In this document: positions 20,308 through 63,360 of the stretch, one piece after another | How positions within the stretch are numbered: position 1 is the first letter of the stretch | How the letters are laid out: every line of letters starts with the position of its first letter | DNA from: Bugula neritina | Taxonomy: Eukaryota > Animalia > Bryozoa | Assembly (NCBI GenBank): GCA_964035545.1 | Contig: OZ037766.1 | Coordinates: 15,614,722-15,678,721, forward strand | DNA length: 64,000 nucleotides | Direction: 5' to 3' | Made by a program: the position numbers and the translations under genes | The notes under the pieces: model-generated | Databases searched by the model: none | The model's input: the letters and a program-made list of their open reading frames with translations, nothing else | What the model was told of the DNA's origin: nothing

Positions 20308-21804
20308 TTAATCTGGTTTTATGGTGGGTTGCTTGTTTGAATCATTAGATTTCGTTACGTTTCTGGGATATTTACGCATTTTGTGAAGAGAAGTTGGGTG
20401 CCTTTCTTTGCAGATATTGCAAACAGCAGGAGATCCACATCCCTTGGCAATGTGGTTATCATCTAAACAGGCATAGCAAAGGCGTTTGTCTCTTATGAAC
20501 TCATGAACTTCTGAAAATGGCAGGAGGTTTAGCTTGCCACAAACAGCAGTTTTGTGATTGTCCATTTTGCAAAATATACATGCATGAATGTGTGTTTTGG
20601 ATTGCTGTGGAGTGACTTCAGTTTTCTGTGTAGCAAATGTTCTCTTTGATATCACAGGTTTTTTAATGATGTCTTGGGTTTTTGTCTTTGCTTGCGTGTT
20701 TGACTCATGGAGAACTTTTGACATGTTGAAAGCCTCATTGAAAGCCATCTTCAACTTCTGGTATTTCTGTGTATTGCTCAAAAACATGGGCGGTTCTAAT
20801 GGACGTTGCCTAACTAGGTTGATACTTTCAGCGTAATCATCAGGTGTGAAGGCAGGTTGCCGTTGGTGACTGGAGGTAGTGATGGGGCTTTGATAAGCAG
20901 GCTGGAGAACATTCCTTGAACTTTTGGTAGACTGTACAAAAGGATTTGTGGATGGTGGAGGCGTCATGAACTGTAAGAAAGGGTTTGTAGATGCTACAGG
21001 TGCCAATGGAATAATGTGAGGTTGTATTATGTTTTGTTCTGGAGGCTGAGGTTTGTAAATTATTGGTTGAGGTGGAGCAGCTGGTATAATAGACAGTGAT
21101 TGGTTTAGAAGAGGACAGGAGCTATCTTTCTCTTCCTCTTCTTCAATGGCTTGGGCTATGACTTGCTCTTCAGCCTGCGCTGCGTCTATTTCAGCCTGGA
21201 GCTGTTGCTGTTTGATAGCGTTTGCAAGTTGACTTGCTTGCTGTTGTAACTCATAAATTAATTGTGCAGATTCTAATTTCTTTCTTAGTGCGGCTGCTTT
21301 AGCTTTAGATTTTACCTGCATTAATCTTAGCTGTGACTGTGAGCTAGCACGAGATGAGTGACTGGATGAAGCCGATTTTGAACTAACAAAGTGACTAGCA
21401 GATCCTAAGATCTCGAAGCGCTGATTTTCTTGTGCTGGCTCGAAGCCAGCAGCTTTTGTTTTAGTTGAAAGTTTACTCATTCGATCTATGGCATCACCAA
21501 TCAATGTTTCACAATCGGAATGCAATCTATCCATTTGATTTCGGACTCGAAGATCTGGCTCATGGTCTCCTAGCATCTGGCGCCACTCATCATAGGTTCC
21601 CTCTAAGTTGTGTTTAACTTGAGATAGTTGGTTTTTATAACTTTCCAATGAGTCGTACGAAATATCCTGTTTTGATGCAAAGTGTGAAAATATAGCTTCG
21701 TGTAACTCAGCACAGTTTTTGATTTCATTGTCTAGCTGTGCAGCTTTCTGAATAATTTTTGTTCTTGAAAATATATGGGGTTTTGAGGTGTTTGATTTAG
21801 ACAT
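20308..21804 (-). CDS. gag: BEL/Pao Gag-like protein (498 aa)
   Basis: Uninterrupted ORF with a coiled-coil region and the BEL-type triple Cys-His knuckle (CIFCKMDNHKTAVC, CYACLDDNHIAKGC, CNICKERHPTSLH). Confidence 0.88.
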   Translation of the reverse strand: MSKSNTSKPHIFSRTKIIQKAAQLDNEIKNCAELHEAIFSHFASKQDISYDSLESYKNQLSQVKHNLEGTYDEWRQMLGDHEPDLRVRNQMDRLHSDCETLIGDAIDRMSKLSTKTKAAGFEPAQENQRFEILGSASHFVSSKSASSSHSSRASSQSQLRLMQVKSKAKAAALRKKLESAQLIYELQQQASQLANAIKQQQLQAEIDAAQAEEQVIAQAIEEEEEKDSSCPLLNQSLSIIPAAPPQPIIYKPQPPEQNIIQPHIIPLAPVASTNPFLQFMTPPPSTNPFVQSTKSSRNVLQPAYQSPITTSSHQRQPAFTPDDYAESINLVRQRPLEPPMFLSNTQKYQKLKMAFNEAFNMSKVLHESNTQAKTKTQDIIKKPVISKRTFATQKTEVTPQQSKTHIHACIFCKMDNHKTAVCGKLNLLPFSEVHEFIRDKRLCYACLDDNHIAKGCGSPAVCNICKERHPTSLHKMRKYPRNVTKSNDSNKQPTIKPD

Positions 21805-36539: not shown

Positions 36540-37720
36540 CTTAAGAGGTCAAATGGGGCTTGGTAAGCGAAATAGACAGCTCACCTCTCATCCTAAAGAA
36601 TGTGCAGACATGTTCAACTATTAGTTTTATTTCCACAGAAAGTTTGCTATGCCTACTGGTCATCAGCCTTCCATACACACCTCTAGTACCCACACAGGAG
36701 ATCCCGGTGTGTCTGCCTCTGGAGTAGTGAAAATGATGCAAGATTTAAAATACGGAAAAGCTGCAGGTCCAGGCCCCCAAAAAGCTGATCTGGGCATAGA
36801 CATAGAACAAACTGCTGCATTTCTCAGTCATATATTTCAAGTTTCTCTTACAATTGAAAAGCTTCCATCAGAATGGAGGACAACCAACATCTCACTTCTT
36901 CAAAAGTATGGACGGTGGGTGACGGACAATGCCAACAACTATCAACCCATTTCTGTGACAAGTATTCCTTGTAAGATATTGGAGCATTTGGTACTGGGAC
37001 ATCTGCTGGAAAAAGTTGACCGTAAGCTAAGTAGGCGGCATGGATTTAGAAAAGGCCTCTCTATGCACTATATGCTTCTACAGACAGACACCAAACTGTT
37101 CATGCAGCTGTTTTAGACTTTACTAAAGCTTTTAATTTAGTGCCTCATGTCCTTTTAATGAAAAAGCTTTCAGAGATTGGATGAATGCATCTTACACTAG
37201 ATAGAAAACTTCCTAGCCAATCAAAACAGAGCAAGTGGTGTTGCAAGGTCATGCCTCAGACCCTTTACCAGCTACTTCTGGTGTGCGACAAGAATCGGTT
37301 TTGGGACCAATAATATTCCTGAATTTTATTAATGACCTACCTAACTATCTTGATTGCTTGTGTGCCTTGTTTGCTGATGACATCCTTGTCTACCAGGAGA
37401 TAGCCTCATTGAGTGACTGCAGTAAGTTCCAACGTAATCTAGATTCTTTTGATGCTTGATCAGACAAGTGGGGTATGTCATTCAACATCTCTAAAAGCAA
37501 AATAACAAGCTTCAACTGTGTAGGCGATACCCCCAATTACACATTAAGTGGATTAGTGCTAGATTATGTAGACTTTACAAAATACCTGGGTGTCCTACTG
37601 CAATCAGATTGCATGCTCAATAAACATATTATATCAAATAGAATACTAGATGCTAGAAGATATGCCTACTGGGCCCCCGAACGAGCACGCCTGTTTGCAT
37701 ACAAAGCATTGGTCGCAATC
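36540..37720 (+). mobile_element. Decayed LINE reverse transcriptase fragment (CR1/L2/Jockey group)
   Basis: KAAGP, LPSEWR, NYQPISVTSIPCKILE, HGFRKGLS, LDFTKAF, SGVRQESVLGPIIFLNFINDLP, LFADD, WGMSFNISK and KYLGV lie across three broken ORFs. Confidence 0.92.
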
Positions 37721-49450: not shown

Positions 49451-52400
49451 ATGAACGTTAAAAGGGTATGCATTTGGCTTATAGTTGGCGTCACTTTGCT
49501 TGTACATAGAGTATGCAATGAACAACATGACATCGAGTACTTGTGCTCTGCAGCTCAGAGTAATAGTAAGTTACCTACTTGACTATATTAGTAGAGTATG
49601 TTATGTACTTAACTACGCTATATGAGTATAATAGTTATGTACTTGACTATATGAGTGCATACATATCACTTATAGGACATTGCAAATTTATTATTATGTC
49701 TACTATAATATATAATTTTACAGATCTTAATACAAAGAAGTTATATAGCCTATATAGTCTATTGTTTAACTGAATACTGGTATAATGCATGCACTTATAT
49801 AATATTATGATTAACTGAATTGTGAAAAAGCTTTTTTAATGGTGATTAAAATTTTATATATTTTGTTTGATAGTTAATTATGAGTAAAATGATAACTGCG
49901 TACCATCTATATCATCTATATCGGATTGCAAGAGCTAATTATTTTTTGTAACCGTTAAACTAATATTGGATATAACAATTTTCTTAATTTGTTTTGTTCT
50001 GTTGCTGGCTAAATTTTACCTAAATATCATATTTATTATCTATAATACAAGTTTGCAATCTATAATGTATACTTAGAATGTCTTAGCAAGTTTATTTACA
50101 TGCAGCCTAGTTGAATTGGCAACAAATGCCTTATGCAATATTATAAAATGCTCAGCTATGCCAACCCCTTTGCAACTGCACATTCTTACTTTTTTCAAAA
50201 AAGATTTTCAGGTTACACTTCTGCTGAATGGGCACTATGGGAAGGAGTGTGAGCACCAGAACTCAAGATGGCCGACACATGTGCTTCATACACAGCTGGC
50301 CGAATGGCAAAATTTACTCTCCAATAAGATTGGTGGGAAATAATCATGTTTTAATTGAATATAAAATTAAACAGGCTGCCCATTTGCATTTCAAAGTTAA
50401 TATTTGACTTTCACAGCCAACTTTATAACAATTTAATCTACAGCCTGCAATTTTATCTAAAAGATTTTTACATGACAACTAAAATATTGCTTTGATTTAT
50501 TGAAAAAGCTGTTCAAGCTATATTGGGATTCAAAAAATTTTAAAAATTTGTTGTTGCTTGAAATTATAATAATTTTTTTCTATTTTCAGGCGTTAGTGTG
50601 ATTGACACATGCAGTGACCCTGATATAGCCGCTAAGGTAATATCTGAGAATATTCCATATACCTGGACAATAGCAGATCCATCTATTGGAAGAGCAAATA
50701 ACAGTGTCTGTACAGCCAATGGGAGCTCTCCCATAAATATAGGTAATACGTAGTATGCATTATAAACAACATAGACGACATACATCCAGGAGCTTAACCA
50801 CTTATCATATATGAAGTAATATACATCTGTACATAGTTGAAGCTTAAATTTGTCTTGTTGCTTATTTTTATGATGAGTTGAATATAAAGATACTGGTGTA
50901 GACAAAATATCAACCTTTATACAACATCTATACAAAAGAAAAAAATGGGTTTATAGTCGCTATCCATATGAGAACCTCTGATGGAAAAGTTTTTTCTATT
51001 GTGGCGAAAAAGCAATTGCGGCTGAATGTCCTTCCTAACATCACCAATGGCCTTGTGTTTACTAAGCCTGCGCTGTAACCACTAGAGTCTATACCATGAT
51101 TATTATATAGTTTTACAATAACACAGTTGTGCAGCTTATTCTTTCTCTCTAGCAACTTCCAGCTTATTGGCTATTACTATAGCCAATAAGAAACATTTAT
51201 CATATCGATATATTTATTCTATATTCGAATTTTATATGTTGCACTACCTCTTCATTACTGGTATACTTCTCAATACCTATATACTTTTGGCACATGCAGG
51301 GTTTATATCGGAAACTCTTCCCACTGGGTATGAGACGAAGGAAGGACTGTTAGGTAAAGTTAATGTGCCCCTCATTATAACTGTAGACTGGACCACGACC
51401 AATCAGGATACCAATGTGTCTACAGCTGTTATTAGTATCGGTAATGACTTGGAAAGTAAACTTGAGGTTTGCATAGTTAATTCTCAATACCTTCTATTAA
51501 TGTTGCTGCATTAATGTCAAGTCTTATAGTGACTAAGTAAGATTTATATTACATGAAATACTTTTTTCCTGATTATGCTTAAAAATACTCACCCATGTGG
51601 TTTACTGTCTGTAACATAAACGATGATTGCACATCAACACTATTAATAGTTTATTGGTTGAAATTATACAAGAGAGCATGGGTCTTCTTTGGGAATTTTT
51701 AATAATTTTTGTTAATCTGTAGCTACAATGCTTATTATAGACATGTTTATTTAAATTAATGCTGTTGCTTACTAAAATTGATATATGCTACATACATGTT
51801 TAAACCCATTGTAGTCGTTAGCAGTTTTGATGGTAAATATGGATTGGGACTACATTACTGCCATCTATTCTGACGATGTGATTGGGCATAAGAGTCTGGG
51901 ACTGTTCCAAAATATTTCTCACCATCACCAGATCTGCATTAATAAATCTATCAGTATAACTTACAACACTGAACTGGACATTTCAGATATTGTAACTGTT
52001 GGAGTTGTGCTACTTGGCTCAGAGGGTATAGGTAAGTTTTCTATTAATGCAAGTAAAAGAATACTTATTAGCACCTATACCCATTTAGCAATACGGCGGA
52101 GTAGTCTTCTCCACTGTAATATATCAAGCCAGGTGGTTGATGGCCCTAGTGTTATTGAATGTATTTATCTCATTGAAAACAAACTTACCTCTTTTCAAAC
52201 AAAGGAAGTGTATTTCATAATATTACTATAACGACTGAGCTTCAAAGAAAAATTATAGTAAAATATTATATAAAGTAATGATAATTAATGAAATAAATTT
52301 AGCATGATTATGACAATGTTTGTAGGAACATGCAAGCTTATCATGTTTTGTAATATATTTTGTACACTTAGGATTTCATCTTCTCCAACATCTAACTCCA

Positions 52401-55400
52401 TCTTCCCATGTTTGGGTAACTGTTCATGATATCCGTTACGTGGACATAAAAGATGAAGTAAAAGCATATTCTGTGGTTGGAGAGAGCGAGTCTCAAAGAA
52501 TCACCAACTCTCTCGTGTCTCTCAGTAATGCTGTAAAAATTTCCCAAAACAAACCAGACTGTCTGGGATCAGGTAAATTTGTTTTAATTTTGATGCAATG
52601 ATATAATTATGACCATTATGCGTTTTATAAGTTTATAAATCATGTTGGAATATACCAACCCTCTTACAGCTTTCAAAGTAATTTATTCATTTATAACTCT
52701 GACAAATGAATGGAAACATTCACTTTAACATGTATTCAATTTTCACAGCTTGTTCCAAGTTAATTAAAAGGTTCAATGGCTCTACAAACTTTTCTAGTGT
52801 TTAAAATTGCGGTAATTTCTAAACTAATGACGAATATGTATATGTTTTATAGAGGGCACATCTGACCTTTGCTCCAGTAATTCTAAGTTTAGATCTAGTT
52901 TACTAGTCAACCTACAGCAAGAAGTAAAGCTGACAAAAATAAATCTTCAAAACAGATCTTTGAACTTAGATGGTGCAGTTGAAAAATTCATTGTTTATCA
53001 CCATCACTTGTCAATGAGTCAGGTATTGAAATTTCATGCTTATAACAATTTATTGTAATTTTTGTTATGCTTACAAATAAACATATTTAATCTCGTACAA
53101 CTGGAAACAGTGAAAAATTATAACAGTTATTTTATTTAAGTCTTGGGTTGGCTGAGACTGCTATTTTAAAAATGTGATTAAGACCTGGTCAACCAAATGA
53201 GATAGAAAACTACAAACACCTGCCAAACTTGTCAAAATAGTTCAGTGAGATTAATGCTTTAGGAATAGTTATTTGTTGGCAACAATTCTCTGTATAAAGA
53301 GGTTAATAAATTTTTGTTAGCTTGTCAAGCTGTATAAATAACCTATTTAGCACTTTTCAACTCAAGATTCTTCTGTATATCCATCTAATACTATAGATTA
53401 GTACCACACTTTTATTCAGTCCGAGACAGGGATCTCTAGAGAAATAAAACTCTTTAAACTACTTAAAGTAATCATAATTTAACTACTGTATGACAGGTTT
53501 TGTGCCTCTAAATGTTAATACTATAAGTGAGTGATGTATTAACTTTGCTTGTATGCAGGTGGCAGAGTTCTCAATAGACAAGAAATTTAGTGCACAAGAA
53601 AACTTTCTACCAGAATCTTCTCTATGTTTAGGCGACTGCAGACAAACTTGTAGTTCCTTTATAGCTGATCGGTACACTTACTTACATGGGAAGTGGGTCA
53701 TCATAGTTCTGTTGAACATCCATGAACAGTAGGTTCAATGAAATATAGATTATTATGTAAAGGTATATATCTGTGTGTGTGCATGCGTGTATATTATATG
53801 TTAGTATTGCATGAAGCTACATCACATTTTTATAAGACTTTTTGTCACTATGTTTGTTTCATATAATATTTTTCTTGCAGAACAAACTTTTCCGCCCCGT
53901 ATCAATGTGACCGATTCTCTGAAATTTCTCTTTTTCGAACTGAAGCAGCCACTTTTGTGTTTGAGTATCTGAAAAAAGATTTTAAAGATGATCGATTTGG
54001 TTTGCTACTGTTGGACTCGTGCGGAGAAAAGCTACATGTCACCAGCAGGCTGTATAACGTACTGCTTGGCAAAACTGAAGTCTGCAATCAGATGAGGGAG
54101 TGTTTTGATCCTGACTCAGCTGTTATTGTTGTTGGTGGCTCCACCAGTACCATAGCACAACAAGTAAGCTATAGATAGGGTAGTGCCAGCTGGTCGCAAT
54201 TTTGTACTAATCAATGCAGAACTGTTCAATATATGGTACTGTTTACACTTTTTACATTTATGCCATGAATATCAAATCAAAAGAAGGCTAATGTTAGCAT
54301 GAAAATAACAAAGAAATGGTATAAAATGTTATTTCATACTGGGATTAAAAGTTTTAATCAACAGTTTGATCAAATACAACTTGGAGATAACTGCAGCGCT
54401 TCATTTACTGTGGCGCCACATTAGACGGAGAAAAATCTAAACAAGAGCATATTTAGTGAAAATGCTGAATGGCCAGTGTGGAGCGCTTCTGTGGCAGTGA
54501 CTCACTTGGCTATAACTATTTCACAAACCCGCTTTTCGTGTTTCAGATTTGTATTCTGTTTAGCTGTGCGTCATTGATAATAGAGAGTGACATTTAAAAA
54601 TGGAAACCTTTTAGCAATTTAGATTTTCAACTTTCTACTTTTTTTTAGCAAAATCAGTCTTTTCTTATCTGTAGTCATCTTTTTACAGCAGACATTATTA
54701 GGAAAGCAAAAGTGCTGTAGGCAAGCAGTAAAGTCAAATGGCTTGTAAATTTTTGCTGCCCCATGTAGATTCGCACACAGAAATTTGTCTAATGTGACCC
54801 CACACCTAGCATAGCTCAGTTATTAATCAAATTTCTTTGCCTTTATTTTTGTGTTGGTCAGTTGCAGACGATTACCAGAGAAGTCCCGCTTATTCAGATG
54901 TCATATGCAGCCTCCAGTGTTATGCTCAATGATCGAGAAAAACATCCATTCTTTCTGAGAACAAGTCCGTCTGATGACCTTCAGTGTCATTTCATGGTAG
55001 AGTTGATCAGATCATTCAGTGGAAGTAAAATCAATGCTGTGAACCTCCTATACTCATCTTCCTTGTATGGTGTAACAGCAGCAGAAGTAAGTCATACGGT
55101 TGACAGCAATCAGTACATAACATCATCAAACGTTTGCAAATCTTTAACTTAGGATAAAATATTGTGGTGGTAGCTTTTTTAGATGACATAATCAAAATGT
55201 TAGTTAAGTTAAATGAAAATAAGTATGTAAAATACAATACATAGATAACAATAAAACACATTAATGTTTGTTTAGTGGTGATGATGGTGGCAATGTAGTT
55301 TAGAGCATATCGTAATATATACGTACCATATATATGCCCTTTGACCGTTTGGTTTAGAGTAACTCAACTATAAAATTTAGGTTTCATAATATATACACTA

Positions 55401-58400
55401 TAGATTTAAGATAAACAAATTATTTTTGCTGAGGGTTTTGAATTATAAAAAAACTTTTGGCTAGTTTTTCTGTGTGTTGTATTTATGCATAAGATATCAT
55501 TAATATTTCTAAAAACTAAACAGTGGAGTAACATATAAGCTCATATTGATAATAATGCCAACTTACTTAATTACTACAACACTATTAAAAACTGTTGTTG
55601 AATTGAGTCTGATAAAGGTTTGGAGAAAAGCAGTTATGTTAGACATATATTTATGTAGAAGATAAAGACGCTGCTGAATGATAGTGGAATATTTGTACAC
55701 ATTGATGAGAAGATAACTTACAATACAAACTTTTCTAGTCTAGCTATTGATTTGATCTACCACTCGGAGAATGTGAAGATGACAATTGCATTCCTTGAAA
55801 ATGAAGTAAGTTTACTGTGGTACAGTAAACCAAGTTCTTAATCATAAGATATGTTAATTTGAAAACTGTGTGTTGGTGAAACATTTAATATTTGATTTTT
55901 ATACATATCTTATACCATGCGATGATATATCAATAATTGTAACACTTTTGAGCTAAGAGTTTATGTAAAACTATATATTTATAGAAAATAATATAATACA
56001 TTTTCTATATTTTTACTTTTTTTACATCTTTGACAAAACTCAAACAAATGTTTAGATTATAAAAAAAACTTGAAAACTGGAGAGAGCATTTGCGTTGATG
56101 TTTTTTTATTAACTTTTACACAGTGATGACCACATTATTGTAAACCTTTAAAAGATTGAAACTTCATATTTTAATTCACATTTGCAACATAGTAAAAGAG
56201 AAAAATGATAAATCATAAATTATGAATTATTAAGACACGTTCCGAGATAGTAGCTTAGGCATTCTAATAAATGATCTGTTTTTACTTCAAAATTGAAAAA
56301 AGACTGACCTACTCTCTAAAGAATATTAAGAAGACTTTGCATACCTGTTTAGAAACAAACTAACGCTTACATACGCAACTGTTTTAGCATATTGTGGGTT
56401 TGATGGACGAGGCTAAAAAGAGATACACGGCCTGGACTCTTGCTGGGCTCAGTTTCATCTTTAGTGAATCATGGAGTTCTGATATGGCCGGTTATCTCCA
56501 AAAGTATGGGGATTTAATGGCTGGTAGCTTTGCATTTAGATTTGCTACAAATTTCAGGGTAAGTTTTTGTTCTGATAAAATATAATACATTTGTGCAAAT
56601 CTATAATATTGTAAGTTTTACAAATAAGGCCAGCTAATCAAGCACTTTTTCCATGTTCAGCAGTAATGTTTTAACCCTAATAAGCAAATGGTGTGAATTC
56701 AAAGAAAATTAACTTTGAAATCTTTTTGTCACTTATAATATTTTCAATCACTGACTTGCTATTGTATTACAATGTCTAAAGTTATTTGCTTTACGCTGGT
56801 ATGATAGATAGCTAAATTTAAAAATTTGTCCAATATTTTGGTAAACAAAGATGTTTCGATAATACATTTTAATCTTGCTTCAAAGGAAATTTACTGTAGC
56901 TTTATTAAAAAACAACTGTTATATTATGTTTCTATGTTAAAATGTTGCATTCACATCATTTTATAGAGTAACTCTTTCACCACTCACTTGAAGAATATTA
57001 GTTTACCTACAATTGATGATAGGAATTACTGGCTCTCAACCCTGGTAGAGGAAGTAGGTAAATGTAAGATACGAGGAAACTTTCACAGCACTTATACCAG
57101 ACAGTGCGAATCTCAAAGTGTAAACCTCGTCAGGTTACAGAATGAGCTGTATTCACTACATTTGATGAAGTCAATCACTGCTGCTGTATATGGAATCAGA
57201 AAAATGGCTATTGACATGCCAGAAGAGTACCTCTTTGATAGTGACAGAGTAAAGGATAGGTATAATGAAATGTTACATATTGCTCTTCCCACAGTTCTAG
57301 AAGATAAGTCAACTAAAAACCACCATCCATTTGACAGTCAGGGGAATGGCAACGTAGGATACCAGATTTACAACATAGTAAAGCTGAATGAATCGACAAC
57401 CATTTACCAATTATTTACAACGACTGAACCGATCAACCAGATGGAGCAGGTACAGCATAGAGTGCCAGTGTTCTACACTTACAGGAATAAAGCAAGAACA
57501 GCAGTGTTTTCTATAAACAGTACGTGTCACACTTGCAACAAACTAAAGTTGACACCAGCTGACACAACCACGACGACAAGTACAATAGGAACTTCTACAT
57601 CAACAAGTATTCAGCTGCCTACATCAACAACAGCCTTCCTGGGGGCAATACTAGCTGCTGTAATTCTCACATTCTTTGCAATGAGTGAGTGATCATGTCA
57701 GTTTTCATGATATGAAAAAACACAGCAAATATTTTTATCCATTAATACAAAATTTAAAATAAGGATGCATTTCCTCAGCAATATGTTGTATAGCTGATAA
57801 TTTAAAATAACTTTCTGTACTCAATATTTGGTGTCATGGTTAGGGCTTTCTAAAAAGTGTAGAGTCTGCAATCAGCAATTAAGATTCAGTAGCTAGTTTA
57901 GTTAAGTAAAAACATTGAAAGCTTGAAGTTTTGCATGTTGTAATTTTTCAAATTCTAATAATCTGTTGATTTAATTCATGATGCCTTACAGGTTTCTGTC
58001 ATCAAAAGATTTTGAATGAGTTGAGAGGCATCAGGAGACAACTCTCCTCTATGAGACCAGCACGATGCTTTAACAGCAAAGAAACAGGTGCATTGACTTT
58101 CTATATGCTTAGTAATAAGTAAATTGATAACATCATACACATTATAGGCTCCAAAACCAGAACTTCTTACTGCATTAGTGATTAGTAGTTGTTTTATTGG
58201 CATATCGTTGTTTATGTATATAGTTATGGCCCACTGTATAACGGTAGAGCTTAACATTAGTATGTATAGCAATATGGCTATAAGCAGCCTAGAATGTAGA
58301 TAATCTCAAGGTGCTGATCACTTAGAACTTGACTAGCTGGTGAGTAACTTTTACATAATAGATAATACAAAGTGGTCATCTTTGATCTTAACTCGCTATA

Positions 58401-58980
58401 AGACTTATTAGAAGTTCTATAAAACTAATTGAAATTGCTTTCTGCTGCATGCTGCAGTTATTAAAATATCTTTCATTTAGCTGCACATTTTTAATAGATA
58501 CTAGCATTATATAAAACTGATTCAAATTGAAGCCTATTTATAATCTTCAATCTTTTCATTTCTGAGTTATAATTATTTGCCAAAATTTTTTTGTAGCTTT
58601 AAACTAACTGTAAAGCTAAATTATTAGTGTGTTTCTTTTGCTACACTAATTGTTAACTGTTTACAAGGTATACAAACTTTTCCTCAGATTTCAATGGCAA
58701 TGGCATCAAAGAATCCCAACCAATTGATCAAGAATGTAGCGGAGGTGGAAGAAGCTCACATGCACTTCAGCCACCGTTGTCTACACCTGTGAGGGATGAG
58801 CCTGAGTTGATCAGCAACAATATACACCCGTCTGTTTCCCCTTGTACAGAAGATGAAATGCCTGATTCCAACCACAGTAACAGTAGAAAAATACATATTT
58901 TACAAAATCTGAAAGATGATACTGACTTTCATTCTATGGGAGACATGACTGAAAAAGGAAATAACTCCCATAACAATTAG
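49451..58980 (+). CDS. Single-pass membrane protein with two tandem class-C-GPCR-like Venus-flytrap (ANF_receptor) domains, ~1084 aa. Exons 49451-49565, 50204-50332, 50590-50742, 51300-51466, 51815-52031, 52372-52572, 52853-53022, 53559-53728, 53881-54163, 54862-55086, 55659-55805, 56388-56558, 56967-57684, 57992-58087, 58688-58980
   Basis: Signal peptide; VFT1 motifs LLLNGH, IDTCSDP, DWDYITAIYSDD; VFT2 motifs GKWVIIVLLNIH, LLDSC, VVGGSTS, QMSYAASS.MLNDREKHPFFLRTSPSD, LYG, SESW, RNYW, FDSQGNGNVGYQIYN; then a Thr/Ser stalk and TM FLGAILAAVILTFFAMSFC. All 14 introns are phase-compatible. The last two exons are less certain. Confidence 0.82.
50948..51090 (-). mobile_element. Degenerate copy of the tRNA-derived SINE
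   Basis: Shares tgagaacctctgatggaaa and cttcctaacatcaccaatggcctt with the copies at 44590 and 59656. Confidence 0.7.
54409..54805. mobile_element. Intronic MITE
   Basis: tgtggcgccacattagac pairs with gtctaatgtgaccccaca. Confidence 0.6.
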
Positions 58981-59655
58981 AAATATTAATATTGAGTTTC
59001 TAAAAGTTTGCAAATTAGCCTTTTAAATAGGCTCGCTACTAATATCAATATTTTTACAATATGTCCTATTACTATCTTGCTTGGAAAAAAAACTGACCGA
59101 GAAGCTATATCATGTGTGCTGTAAACGTTAAACTTTGTTGTCTCTTAGGCTGACCACAATTATTATTGGGTGTTCAGAAAAAATTATTTTAACTTTATTA
59201 GTAAAACACAATTTAAATAGCTGACTATCTTTTCCTAGAAACTTATCATATCCTAATTATCTTTTCTGTGGTCCCCATTTCACACAATTTTTAAAATTTG
59301 AACTAGCAAATATTCAATGGACTAGTTGAGTTCAGCTTTTATATTAGTTGAATTTTATATATTGGTTGAATTTGGAAAGACTATTTGAACAAGGACACCC
59401 TTTTATTTATAACTTCTGCATTGTCATACAATTACATAAAAAAACCATATTTTTAGATCGCCAAATTTTTTCTGACTAAAGAATATTATTTTGATGTTTG
59501 TTTTGTTTATGTCACTATTAGGTGCATACTAAAATTGAACGACAATAGCTGTAATTGCTTTCCCGTCACTTTCAGAAGTATTTTCAAGTACACAAACAAA
59601 GAAAATGTTTTTGACAAAAGTAAACTTGACTAAAAGCTTATGCAGCTAAACATTC

Positions 59656-59860
59656 AAGTTTATATAAGTCACCATCCCTGTGAGAAAACCTCTGATGAAA
59701 ACGGTTTTTTGTTAAATCAGGCTAAGCACTTATTCAGTTGAAGCACAAGAGCAATTATGACTGGATGCTTTTCCTGACATCATCAATGGCCCTTGCCGGG
59801 CTCGAACCCATGACTTTGTGCTTACTAGGCAAACGCTCTAACCCCTAGACCACAGCTGCT
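59656..59860 (-). mobile_element. tRNA-derived SINE (tRNA-Thr(AGT)-like head)
   Basis: The minus strand carries an A box TGGTCTAGGGG, an anticodon-like loop CT-AGT-AA and a B box GGTTCGAGCCC, followed by a non-tRNA body shared with two other copies. Confidence 0.82.
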
Positions 59861-60117: not shown

Positions 60118-60487
<370 letters not shown>

Positions 60488-61207: not shown

Positions 61208-63360
61208 ATGGCTAACCTGGACACCATTTTACTACTTACACTGACTGTTGTTACACTCCAAGGAGGTTTTGTGAGTTCTCAACACGCAGAATACATCTGT
61301 AAATCTTCAAATGCTGGGGGTAAGTAGTTAAAACATTGTATAAACTACCCGTTCTGCAACTGCAACAGTGTTTCCCAATTTTTACTTTTTGCTCATTTGT
61401 GTGTTTTGTCTATACTTTGTACTTTTAATTTAGTCCAATTTACACAAAGGTTTAGTCAAATTGAAATAAAGTCAAGAAAATAGTTGCATATAATTTGTAT
61501 ACTAAGTTGCAAATACCTGCCACTAGATGTCAAGGACACTTTTACTACTACTTACTGTAAAAAACACTGCTTTCAAATTATTCACCCCCCCCTCCCAAAA
61601 TAAACTTAGCCAATAAATGGCATATTTACAATTGCTATATTAAAAATTTTGGTTTGAATGTATAGTTACAACTGAGAAGATATGTATTATACTTCTAACC
61701 ATACAGTTGCTGTCATGGTTTGACTTTAAATTCTATGTCTCTATAGCTACTGCTAATGCTAATCAATTCTTTAATTGGTTTTCAATAACTCTCCATGCTA
61801 AATAATATCGTCTTTTGGAATGTGCAAGTTTAGAAAAATTAAATGTTTTTACCATAACTATATTTAATAGCATGCCAACATGGCTTAGCATAATAATATT
61901 ATGTATATTATACTTATAGCAACTTTTTTGCATTTGGCATTATATACCAGAAAACTGCTATGTATTTTGGTGCATGCTGTAACCATTATAACTATATAAT
62001 ACACATATAGCACAGTTTTCTTATTCCAAGTTTTTATTACTGTAGTTAACGTTATATATAATTTTGATTAACCATGAATTAACAATTTTAGAAGAATTTT
62101 ATGAAGTGCCAAGGCTAGTGATTACTTAACATTTCAAATTCTACAAAACTTGATCTAAGATGCTACCACAATTGCCAGTATTCTACATATAATTATAAAT
62201 TTGATGCCTATAATACAATCACATTATAGTTATAGACAACTGATGTGATATGGTATCAGTGATAATAAAGCTAAAATTTCCCGCATAATGGTGGGTCTCT
62301 TTCAACCATTATGGTCAAATATATCCCTGATCACAATTAACATCTTGTTCAACCAAGCGCGTCATTTTCCTTATTGGTTAATAAGTTATAAGTTACTTAA
62401 TATGAAATACTTTACAGCAATTTCATCGCGCTGCATATAGTGTTTATTTTCTACTGCTATTCACCAAGTGTTAGTATTAATAGCTCTCATACCTTCACCA
62501 TCTCAACAAGGCTTGCCTCACTGCTAAATGAGCTTTGCTATTGGTTGAATTAGCCTACCCTAACATAATAGCTTCAGAGCCTGCTTTATAATCTGTTTTG
62601 AAAGTATATGTTGTACGTATAATATGTATTCTAGGTAGATCAACTTCCTCGTTGTTCATGAATTCAGCTTTCATAAGGGGGTATCATTGCATTTGTCCAT
62701 TCCAAAGAAATTTTTGTTTGTAATCTGAATGCAGTTTTTAAAAACGTGTAACAAAAGAGAGTAAAGAGAGAAGCTCACTAAGTGACTAAGTTCTATTTCA
62801 TGTGCATTATTTTACCAGGTCATATTTAAACTGTTTATACAAAATGAAGTCATGATGTAAGCATGTGCTTATTATATTTCAAGGCGAGATTATTCTTCTA
62901 TTAAACCTACACTATGGAGCAGAATGTGAGCAGCAGAATTCAAGATGGCCGACATCAACCCTTCCTGCAGAGATACTTAAATGGGAAAAGACCTTGTCAG
63001 CAAATATAGGCAGGCCTTACACTGTTTTAGATATAGCCTTAAATAAGCTTGATATAAAGTAACTTGTAAACAGTGTTGACTCAGTTTTGAGTAATTCAAG
63101 TAATATATTTATAACTTGAATAATCTCCTGAATTTTCTAGCAATAATTTATATAAATCAAAAAATTACATTTGCAGTCATAGTCATTTTTGAGCACGATT
63201 GTTTTAGATTTCAAAGTTGTTGACACATGCAGTGACCCTGATATAGCTGCTAAGGTAATATCTGAGAATATTCCTTATACCTGGACCATAGCAGATCTGT
63301 CCATTGGAAGAGCAAATAACAGTGTCTGTACAGCCAATGGGAGCTCTTCTATAAATATAG
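61208..63360 (+). CDS. 5' part of a second VFT-receptor paralog that probably continues beyond the window. Exons 61208-61319, 62884-63009, 63208-63360
   Basis: Signal peptide MANLDTILLLTLTVVTLQGGFVSS, then QHAEYIC, LLLNLHYGAECEQQNSRWPT and DTCSDPDIAAKVISENIPYTW, collinear with exons 1-3 of 49451-58980. Confidence 0.85.

What the first reader, a model, noticed from the sequence alone, without database searches (positions are those of the whole stretch)
49451..58980. Double-Venus-flytrap receptor with one TM helix and no 7TM domain
Seen: a fully open 15-exon model encodes signal peptide - VFT1 - VFT2 - a short CHTC motif - Thr/Ser stalk - one hydrophobic helix - ~125-aa polar tail - stop. Only ~2.2 kb (SINE, microsatellite, no hydrophobic ORF) separates it from the next paralog's ATG, so I see no encoded 7TM. 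Known: mGluR/CaSR/T1R-type class C GPCRs have one VFT, a nine-cysteine domain and a 7TM; the best-known single-pass VFT proteins are natriuretic-peptide receptors/guanylyl cyclases. The motifs here (SYAASS, FFLRTSPSD, RNYW, FD..GNG..Y.IYN) are class-C type and no kinase or cyclase domain follows. Inference: a tandemly expanded family of G-protein-uncoupled sensors, co-receptors or decoys that may be undescribed.
Basis: partly seen in the sequence, partly recalled or inferred. Interest (0 to 1): 0.85.

Follow-up and report, generated by a model that had tools for sequence, protein, structure and literature searches.

The report
Two-flytrap single-pass receptor without 7TM
This is an intact, transcribed gene for a membrane protein that carries two glutamate-receptor-type ligand-binding "Venus flytrap" domains on one membrane helix instead of a G-protein-coupled seven-helix body. 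It belongs to an unstudied family shared by bryozoans, brachiopods and molluscs.

Summary
Window 49451-58980 (+) carries a 15-exon gene: all 14 introns are GT..AG and the exons sum to 3255 nt (1084 codons plus TAG). Spliced RNA contigs from three runs confirm the junctions of exons 7 to 15. That includes TM exon -> 96-nt exon -> last exon with the stop, and a further contig runs across the stop into the 3'UTR. No 7tm_3 match lies within 1.6 Mb.

The order is signal peptide, reduced VFT1, three-Cys linker, canonical mGluR-like VFT2, CHTC, Thr/Ser stalk, one TM helix, and a polar tail of about 129 aa. The next two tandem paralogs have the same exon order. The third matches GenBank KAF6020825.1, misnamed "GRM1", of Bugula neritina.

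Full-length relatives in molluscs and the brachiopod Lingula share the plan: two ANF_receptor domains, one TM helix, no NCD3G, 7tm_3, kinase or cyclase. VFT1s and VFT2s form separate, congruent groups in a tree, so the architecture looks ancient in Lophotrochozoa.

VFT2 keeps the class C alpha-amino-acid-binding residues and is predicted to dimerise through lobe-1 helices. I found no paper on this family.

Verdict: a real new variant of a known kind. Function is inferred, not shown. Two other first-stage notes of this scan flagged the same family in this genome.

The parts
49451..49565 (+). Exon 1: ATG and signal peptide (MNVKRVCIWLIVGVTLLVHRVC...), ends in phase 1
   Evidence: Predicted. GT donor. 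The ...EYLCSAAQSN stretch parallels ...EFLCSSQTSE of P0063. No RNA was laid here.
50204..53022 (+). Exons 2-7 (50204-50332, 50590-50742, 51300-51466, 51815-52031, 52372-52572, 52853-53022): VFT1, a reduced ANF_receptor-type domain
   Evidence: The same exon order is conserved in paralogs 2 and 3. Exon 5 matches ANF_receptor profile 111-159. VFT1 of P0063 scores 27.8 bits against a cut-off of 25.4. It aligns best to mollusc VFT1s. The exon 7 donor is confirmed by RNA loose ends.
53559..53728 (+). Exon 8: inter-domain linker with three family-invariant Cys (CLGDCRQTC, 53625-53651) and the first strand of VFT2
   Evidence: RNA joint 53728|53881 and the upstream loose end. Invariant C402/C406/C410 in alignment A2.
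53881..57524 (+). Exons 9-13 (53881-54163, 54862-55086, 55659-55805, 56388-56558, 56967-...): VFT2, a canonical mGluR/CaSR-like flytrap with GGSTST, SYAASS, TSPSD, SLYG, SESW
   Evidence: RNA joints, all GT..AG. Pfam ANF_receptor E 1.7e-8. PDB mGluR1 E 1.9e-6. Binding residues mapped. The paralog's VFT2 fold gives TMt up to 0.85 to mGluR structures.
57525..57632 (+). CHTC motif (57525-57536, a possible remnant of the first two Cys of a cysteine-rich domain) and the Thr/Ser-rich stalk (57552-57632)
   Evidence: Read from the sequence. C905 is invariant and C902 nearly so in the family. The stalk is present in all three paralogs.
57633..57684 (+). Single transmembrane helix (AFLGAILAAVILTFFAM, continued by S-F-C in exon 14); exon 13 ends in phase 1 right after it
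   Evidence: All three paralogs have a phase-1 donor just after the helix. RNA joint 57684|57992 in two runs. Relatives have one strong TM helix.
57992..58087 (+). Exon 14: basic juxtamembrane start of the cytoplasmic tail (FCHQKILNELRGIRRQ...)
   Evidence: Spliced RNA contigs in X3 and X5.
58688..58980 (+). Exon 15: polar, low-complexity tail; stop TAG at 58978-58980
   Evidence: The RNA joint to 58685/58688 lies in the same X3 contig as the TM exon. An X4 contig at 58922-59332 covers the stop and the 3'UTR. No Pfam match.

Best explanation
SHOWN: the locus is an intact, transcribed gene. It encodes a type-I membrane protein of 1084 codons: signal peptide, VFT1, three-Cys linker, VFT2, CxxC, Thr/Ser stalk, one TM helix and a tail of about 129 aa without a domain. 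It is the first of three tandem paralogs. The family is conserved across bryozoans, a brachiopod and molluscs, and has no NCD3G, 7tm_3, kinase or cyclase domain.

INFERRED mechanism: the protein is a G-protein-independent, class C-style dimeric sensor of a small ligand. The membrane-proximal VFT2 keeps the residues that hold the alpha-amino-acid group in mGluR1. It probably closes on an amino acid or a similar small ligand. Two VFT2s pair through their lobe-1 helices as in mGluR or CaSR. Ligand-driven re-orientation of the dimer would then change the spacing of the two TM helices and tails. The signal would pass to cytoplasmic partners that bind the selected but unstructured tail, or to a membrane partner.

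VFT1 looks ligand-competent in molluscs. In these three bryozoan paralogs it is reduced and has lost the motif. Three of its exons are kept nearly identical among the paralogs, so it more likely serves as a constant accessory or interaction module.
For: Architecture and expression:
- Exon model with 14 GT..AG introns.
- Spliced RNA contigs in X1, X3 and X5. One 818-nt contig spans the TM exon, exon 14 and exon 15. The loose end before 53556 reads the end of exon 7, which links VFT1 to VFT2.
- Nearest 7tm_3 match is at C2:17309124, against the window at 15.61-15.68 Mb.

Family:
- Three tandem paralogs with the same exon order.
- Paralog 3 matches KAF6020825.1.
- Relatives of 1035-1669 aa have two ANF_receptor stretches and one TM helix.
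- Named members come from molluscs, Lingula and Watersipora.
- VFT1s and VFT2s form separate, congruent groups in a tree.

Ligand site: mGluR1 R78/S164/S165/T188/D208/Y236/D318 correspond to R/T/S/S/D/Y/E in this gene.

Fold: VFT2 of the paralog has pLDDT 80-90 and matches mGluR VFT structures with TMt up to 0.85.

Dimer: the homodimer score is 0.56 against a best control of 0.00. That mark was reached by 21 of 30 proteins solved as pairs of one chain and by 0 of 23 solved as single chains. On eukaryotes it was reached by 17 of 29 pairs, but by only 1 of the 7 with no older solved relative. The runs agree in at least 85% of their contacts and partner pLDDT is at least 78. The interface lies at 487-501 and 531-539, the lobe-1 helices.

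Tail under selection: pectinid orthologues keep the tail at 87-88% identity, like the ectodomain at 84-93%.
Against: - No ligand, partner or signalling output is known for any member.
- Tails have no recognisable domain. They diverge strongly between clades (18-26% identity) and vary from about 20 to 600 aa in predicted models. That fits a partner-dependent or decoy role at least as well.
- The dimer prediction may be memory of solved mGluR dimers (caveat).
- The structure and dimer work used paralog 3 (P0063), not this gene. I did not build the joined product.
- VFT1 folded poorly on its own (pLDDT 47).
- The RNA contigs differ from the window by about 5%. They come from a sibling strain or species, and the runs are labelled RNA only by guess, although intron-free GT..AG joints argue for RNA.
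Confidence: 0.55

Rival explanations
1. Auxiliary subunit or co-receptor. The protein does not signal by itself. It pairs through its VFTs with a true class C GPCR or another membrane receptor and modulates it, much as GABA-B1 supplies ligand binding for GABA-B2.
For: The tail has no catalytic or adaptor domain. Tail length is very variable. The predicted interface is the same lobe-1 surface that class C receptors use for homo- and heterodimers. The genome holds only about 8-10 7tm_3 loci but more double-VFT genes.
Against: No partner has been identified. The family VFT2 clade is distinct from the GPCR VFTs sampled. Tails are conserved within orthologues, which suggests a cytoplasmic role of their own.
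Confidence: 0.2
2. Ligand sink, clearance or uptake receptor. A membrane-anchored binding protein buffers or internalises an extracellular amino acid or cue. This would resemble the clearance receptor NPR-C or the schistosome glutamate-binding protein SmGBP.
For: The binding-site residues are kept and no signalling domain is present. There is precedent for a truncated mGluR that binds glutamate at a surface membrane (PMC3206071).
Against: Long tails conserved among orthologues and a conserved two-domain ectodomain are more than a sink needs. NPR-C and SmGBP have one VFT.
Confidence: 0.15
3. Artefact: two neighbouring genes or a decayed class C GPCR pseudogene wrongly joined into one model, or a 7TM exon that was missed.
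For: Exons 1-6 have no RNA support in the runs laid. The VFT1 Pfam match for this gene's own exon 5 is below the cut-off.
Against: All 15 exons are open with consistent phases. RNA links exon 7 to exon 8 and the TM exon to the stop. The order is identical in three paralogs, and the architecture recurs in mollusc and brachiopod models, among them RefSeq records for Pecten, Saccostrea, Physella and Lingula. No 7tm_3 match within 1.6 Mb.
Confidence: 0.03

Closest known systems
Class C GPCRs (mGluR1/5, CaSR, T1R)
   Same: VFT2 is a clear homologue. The PDB best hit is mGluR1 (E 1e-24 for the paralog). The fold gives TMt up to 0.85. The alpha-amino-acid binding residues are kept. A lobe-1 dimer interface is predicted. 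The CxxC after each VFT resembles the start of the cysteine-rich domain.
   Different: Two VFTs instead of one. No NCD3G domain and no 7tm_3. One TM helix and a domain-free tail, so no route to G proteins.
SmGBP, the truncated mGluR of Schistosoma mansoni (PMC3206071)
   Same: A lophotrochozoan mGluR-derived VFT protein without CRD or 7TM. It is membrane-associated, binds glutamate and forms dimers.
   Different: SmGBP is 488 aa with a single VFT. It has no C-terminal TM helix, stalk or cytoplasmic tail.
Natriuretic peptide receptors and receptor guanylyl cyclases, including the clearance receptor NPR-C
   Same: ANF_receptor domain, one TM helix, dimeric. NPR-C has only a short tail.
   Different: They have one VFT of the NPR subtype that binds peptides. 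Most carry kinase-homology and cyclase domains, which are absent here. By sequence this family is nearer mGluR, CaSR and T1R.
Venus kinase receptors (PMC2680970, PMC3703292)
   Same: Invertebrate single-pass receptors with a class C-like VFT activated by amino acids.
   Different: VKRs have one VFT and an insulin-receptor-like tyrosine kinase domain. No kinase domain is found here or in relatives.
Tandem-VFT sensors: bacterial BvgS/EvgS (PMC4352136, PMC5573083) and trypanosome receptor adenylate cyclases (PMC6027212)
   Same: Two VFT domains in series, then one TM segment. In BvgS the membrane-distal and membrane-proximal VFTs have different roles.
   Different: Known to me here only from a title, two abstracts and a search hit. 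By my own knowledge, the Bvg/Evg VFTs are of a different periplasmic-binding-protein class, all of these carry cytoplasmic catalytic domains, and none shares ancestry with this family beyond the fold.

Membership tests
Class C GPCR (glutamate family) | Extracellular ANF_receptor (Venus flytrap) domain | tested here: met
   Exon 10 matches PF01094 at E 1.7e-8. VFT2 of the paralog scores 79.9 bits. The fold matches mGluR VFT structures.
Class C GPCR (glutamate family) | Nine-cysteine domain (NCD3G, PF07562) | tested here: not met
   No PF07562 match in any exon, in P0063 or in seven relatives. Only CHTC remains.
Class C GPCR (glutamate family) | Seven-helix domain (7tm_3, PF00003) | tested here: not met
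   A genome-wide six-frame search finds the nearest match 1.6 Mb away. RNA runs from the TM exon to the stop. Relatives have one TM helix.
Receptor guanylyl cyclase / natriuretic peptide receptor | Kinase-homology and guanylate cyclase domains after the TM helix | tested here: not met
   No Pfam match in the tail exon or in the tails of P0063, P0055 and P0045.
Venus kinase receptor | Cytoplasmic tyrosine kinase domain | tested here: not met
   Same Pfam scans.
SmGBP-type truncated mGluR | A single VFT with no C-terminal TM helix | tested here: not met
   Two VFTs and a C-terminal TM helix are present. The SmGBP description comes from PMC3206071.
Unnamed lophotrochozoan double-VFT single-pass family (e.g. 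XP_033746774.1 Pecten, XP_013389729.2 Lingula, KAF6020825.1 Bugula) | Two ANF_receptor domains in series, joined by a CxxxCxxxC linker | tested here: met
   (invariant C402/C406/C410). The gene has CLGDCRQTC at 53625-53651.
Unnamed lophotrochozoan double-VFT single-pass family (e.g. XP_033746774.1 Pecten, XP_013389729.2 Lingula, KAF6020825.1 Bugula) | CxxC, then a stalk, then a single TM helix, then a domain-free cytoplasmic tail | tested here: met
Unnamed lophotrochozoan double-VFT single-pass family (e.g. XP_033746774.1 Pecten, XP_013389729.2 Lingula, KAF6020825.1 Bugula) | Ligand-competent VFT1 (class C binding motif, as in the mollusc members) | tested here: not met
   In alignment A3 the bryozoan VFT1 lacks the GxxxS, RTVPSD and DxxYG motifs and about 100 residues. 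This is a lineage-specific reduction rather than grounds for exclusion.

The most novel reading that the evidence does not exclude
These genes define an undescribed, ancient receptor class of Lophotrochozoa. Two class C flytrap domains are stacked on one TM helix. The receptor would transduce amino-acid or other small-molecule signals without G proteins, through a selected but unstructured tail. In bryozoans the family has expanded in tandem, with a homogenised constant VFT1 and a diversifying VFT2, as expected for a chemosensory repertoire.
Probability: 0.35. Interest if true: 0.8.

Novelty: new variant of a known kind. Interest (0 to 1): 0.66.

Why it matters
Class C flytrap domains are textbook ligand sensors. 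They are known to feed G-protein-coupled 7TM bodies, and related flytraps feed kinases, cyclases and ion channels. A conserved family that stacks two of them on a single helix with no catalytic domain shows another way this module has been wired.

The family spans at least three phyla. It gives a natural system for asking how flytrap closure and dimer re-orientation can signal through one TM helix. It also corrects database names: these proteins are annotated as "GRM1" or "metabotropic glutamate receptor 5". That would inflate GPCR counts and mislead neurotransmitter-receptor surveys in molluscs and bryozoans. In a fouling, larva-settling animal such as Bugula, an expanded surface-sensor family is also a candidate for cue detection.

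Tried and rejected
- PDB sequence searches with single exons 9 and 12 of this gene found only chance matches. The whole exon 13 found nothing. These pieces are too short or too divergent.
- Folding VFT1 of P0063 alone with a 13-row alignment gave pLDDT 46.9. I did not search with that model.
- The search for homologous proteins with VFT1 of P0063 returned nothing. With alignment A2 it returned only ordinary class C GPCRs. Word sampling, and the fact that P0063 is hidden behind a 177-aa cluster representative, make both blanks uninformative.
- AATAAA search: no + strand site between the stop and 60048, so the poly(A) site is not placed.
- The search of earlier findings by place returned nothing near the finding.
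- I did not build, translate as one piece, fold or search the joined 15-exon product. Every search used exon references or the natural full-length paralog P0063. Domain-level statements about this gene's whole protein therefore rest on exon-wise evidence plus the paralog.
Full report
WHAT IS THERE

The window is AT-rich eukaryotic DNA (about 32% G+C). It lies on a 33.6-Mb contig of a 216-Mb assembly.

On the + strand between 49451 and 58980 I recover a 15-exon gene. All 14 introns are GT..AG and the reading phases are consistent. The exons sum to 3255 nt, that is 1084 codons plus TAG at 58978-58980. This sum is arithmetic only. Every search used exon references or a natural full-length paralog.

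TRANSCRIPTION AND THE 3' END

I laid contigs of four runs on 53500-59499. They show intron-free joints with GT..AG ends at:
- 53728|53881
- 54163|54862
- 55805|56388
- 56557|56966 (cut +1)
- 57684|57992
- 58084|58685 (cut +3, giving 58087|58688)

The joint reported as 55084|55657 (AA..GT) is best read as 55086|55659 (GT..AG). The contig's strain has GAG where the window has GAA (my reading of the contexts printed).

One 818-nt contig in X3 holds the TM exon, the 96-nt exon 14 and the start of exon 15. An X5 contig repeats the first of these two joints. An X4 contig covers 58922-59332, across the stop.

The letters hanging before 53556 in X3 and X5 spell the end of exon 7 (...IVYHHHLSMS). This ties VFT1 to VFT2 in one transcript.

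The contigs differ from the window by about 5%, so they come from a sibling strain or cryptic species. The label 'RNA' is the tool's guess, but removed GT..AG introns argue for RNA.

A six-frame search of the whole genome with 7tm_3 finds about 15 matches. The nearest is at C2:17309124, 1.6 Mb away.

DOMAINS

Exon 5 matches ANF_receptor profile positions 111-159 (E 6e-4). Exon 10 matches positions 66-134 (E 1.7e-8). These are overlapping parts of the profile in two places, so there are two domains.

Exon 10 hits mGluR1, T1R3 and GABA-B2 in the PDB.

Exon 13 carries, in order: the end of VFT2 (RNYW, FDSQGNGNVGYQIYN), CHTC, a Thr/Ser stalk and the hydrophobic helix. It ends in phase 1 directly after the helix. 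Both other paralogs end the same way. The tail exons give no Pfam match.

PARALOGS AND IDENTITY OF THE ORGANISM

The best in-genome matches to exon 13 lie 15.7 and 31.3 kb downstream. After fetching 40 kb beyond the window, tblastn shows the same exon series in the same order in all three genes.

The cluster of one homologue at 90% identity contains KAF6020825.1, 'GRM1' of Bugula neritina (1134 aa, P0063). P0063 maps exon by exon onto paralog 3, mostly at 82-100% identity and lower in four exons. The genome is therefore most likely B. neritina or a sibling, and the name 'GRM1' is a misnomer.

More distant copies lie on contig C5. They also show a VFT1-type exon, VFT2 exons and, in the one end-of-gene frame I could read (L006), a TM helix after a Ser/Thr-rich stretch.

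RELATIVES ELSEWHERE

I searched 1.84 billion representative proteins with a profile of exon 13 from the three paralogs. It gave 61 hits.
- The seven long hits scanned against Pfam have two ANF_receptor stretches and nothing else.
- All 18 long hits have one strong TM helix. In the full-length models it lies near residue 1000-1070, followed by a tail of 20-600 aa.
- Named members come from bivalves and gastropods (Pecten, Saccostrea, Pinctada, Solemya, Potamilus, Sinanodonta, Tegillarca, Batillaria, Bulinus, Physella, Lymnaea). Others come from the brachiopod Lingula and the bryozoan Watersipora. All are 'uncharacterized' or misnamed.

In a quick maximum-likelihood tree, the VFT2s form one group (SH-aLRT 99) and the VFT1s lie on one side of a branch (84). 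The two subtrees are congruent, and the six class C GPCR VFTs sit nearer VFT2. The two-domain protein therefore predates the split of these phyla.

Caveats on the tree: the Bugula VFT1 sits on a very long branch, the outgroup is small and the search was short.

VFT2 LOOKS FUNCTIONAL, VFT1 IS REDUCED HERE

VFT2 of P0063 aligns to mGluR1 at E 1e-24. Mapping through that alignment, mGluR1 R78, S164, S165, T188, D208, Y236 and D318 correspond in this gene to R, T, S, S, D, Y and E (the D208 column is corrected by one position, as read from the sequence).

The AlphaFold model of P0063 has pLDDT 80-90 over VFT2, a TM helix at 923-962 and a disordered tail. Foldseek gives mGluR VFT structures with TMt up to 0.85.

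Evidence that VFT1 is a reduced flytrap:
- It reached only pLDDT 50-77 in the full model and 47 when folded alone.
- It is about 100 residues shorter than mollusc VFT1s and lacks their GxxxS, RTVPSD and DxxYG motifs.
- It still passes Pfam's cut-off in P0063 (27.8 bits).
- Most of its strongest matches are to mollusc VFT1s rather than their VFT2s.
- Language-model features place it among ANF_receptor families.

DIMER

Two copies of P0063 415-905 scored 0.56 against a best control of 0.00.
- That mark was reached by 21 of 30 proteins solved as pairs of one chain and by 0 of 23 solved as single chains.
- On eukaryotes it was reached by 17 of 29 pairs, but by only 1 of the 7 with no older solved relative.
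- The runs agree in at least 85% of their contacts, and partner pLDDT is at least 78.
- The contacts lie at 487-501 and 531-539. By my own knowledge these are the lobe-1 helices that class C receptors use to dimerise.
- The pass may reflect memory of solved mGluR dimers. It supports likeness and does not show binding.

MOSAIC CONSERVATION AMONG THE PARALOGS

Three VFT1 exons are 87-96% identical in DNA among the three genes: 50602-50744, 51809-52044 and 52366-52579. The identity stops at the exon borders, and the introns do not align.

Synonymous divergence is 0.24 in exon 3 and 0.09-0.12 in exon 5. It is 0.35 at the start of exon 13 between genes 1 and 3. It is saturated in exons 2, 9 and 10. 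This points to short, exon-bounded gene conversion rather than protein-level constraint alone. The result is a constant VFT1 core beside a diverging VFT2 (41-65% protein identity).

TAILS

Among scallop orthologues the tail is 87-88% identical, like the ectodomain at 84-93%. Between bivalve families it falls to 18-26%. So the tail is constrained within lineages, although it holds no known domain.

LITERATURE

Four full-text searches found no description of a eukaryotic protein with two class C-type VFTs on one TM helix. The nearest published cases are:
- SmGBP, a 488-aa single-VFT truncated mGluR of Schistosoma that binds glutamate (PMC3206071).
- Venus kinase receptors.
- Bacterial BvgS/EvgS and trypanosome adenylate cyclases, which have tandem VFTs of other types plus catalytic domains.

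The library lacks most subscription journals, so absence there is not proof.

EARLIER NOTES OF THIS SCAN

Two first-stage notes on this genome describe the same architecture. One covers the next window (paralogs 2 and 3), which I checked directly. One covers another piece, possibly the C5 arrays, which I checked in part.

VERDICT

The gene is a real member of a conserved but unstudied family, a new variant built from a known module. Architecture and expression are shown. Ligand binding, dimerisation and the signalling route are inferred.

My odds:
- Autonomous dimeric small-ligand sensor: 0.55
- Co-receptor: 0.20
- Sink or decoy: 0.15
- Artefact: 0.03

Noticed in passing
window 50602-50744, 51809-52044, 52366-52579; also 56960-57100 (gene 1 against gene 3 only): Exon-bounded stretches are 87-96% identical in DNA among the three tandem paralogs, while the flanking introns do not align. 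Synonymous divergence is 0.09-0.35 here and saturated in the other exons. This looks like short-tract gene conversion that keeps part of VFT1 constant.
   Followed up: partly
window 20308-21804 (-) and 36649-37116 (+): A 498-aa ORF that looks like a retroelement Gag protein with Cys/His zinc-knuckle-like motifs near its C-terminus, and a 155-aa ORF that may be a reverse-transcriptase fragment (judged by eye). Probably transposon remnants upstream of the gene.
   Followed up: no
window 59651-59860 and L011 (about 91034-91244 in window-plus-flank coordinates): An interspersed repeat of about 210 bp (78% identical) lies downstream of gene 1 and of gene 3.
   Followed up: partly
window 58290-58347 (intron 14): A short stretch has very high summed contig depth in X1 (about 200) and loose ends on both sides in all four runs. 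It is a repeat expressed from elsewhere in the genome, not part of this transcript.
   Followed up: no
window 60123-60476: Microsatellite (ATATAC)n with about 58 copies, between gene 1 and the likely first exon of gene 2 (about 61223-61315).
   Followed up: yes
G000:C1:2642748-2654282 (-): Two long open frames of 821 and 877 aa match the VFT2 exon at 38-41% identity, with no 7tm_3 match nearby. They may be further flytrap proteins without a 7TM, possibly intronless.
   Followed up: no
RNA contigs laid on window 53500-59499: Contigs from runs labelled with the same organism differ from the assembly by about 5% in exons. This would fit a cryptic sibling species or a divergent haplotype.
   Followed up: no
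P0042 and P0063 C-termini: The Pecten protein ends in ...SRV, which looks like a class I PDZ-binding motif. The Bugula paralog 3 ends in ...DMV. Gene 1 ends in ...HNN with no such motif.
   Followed up: no
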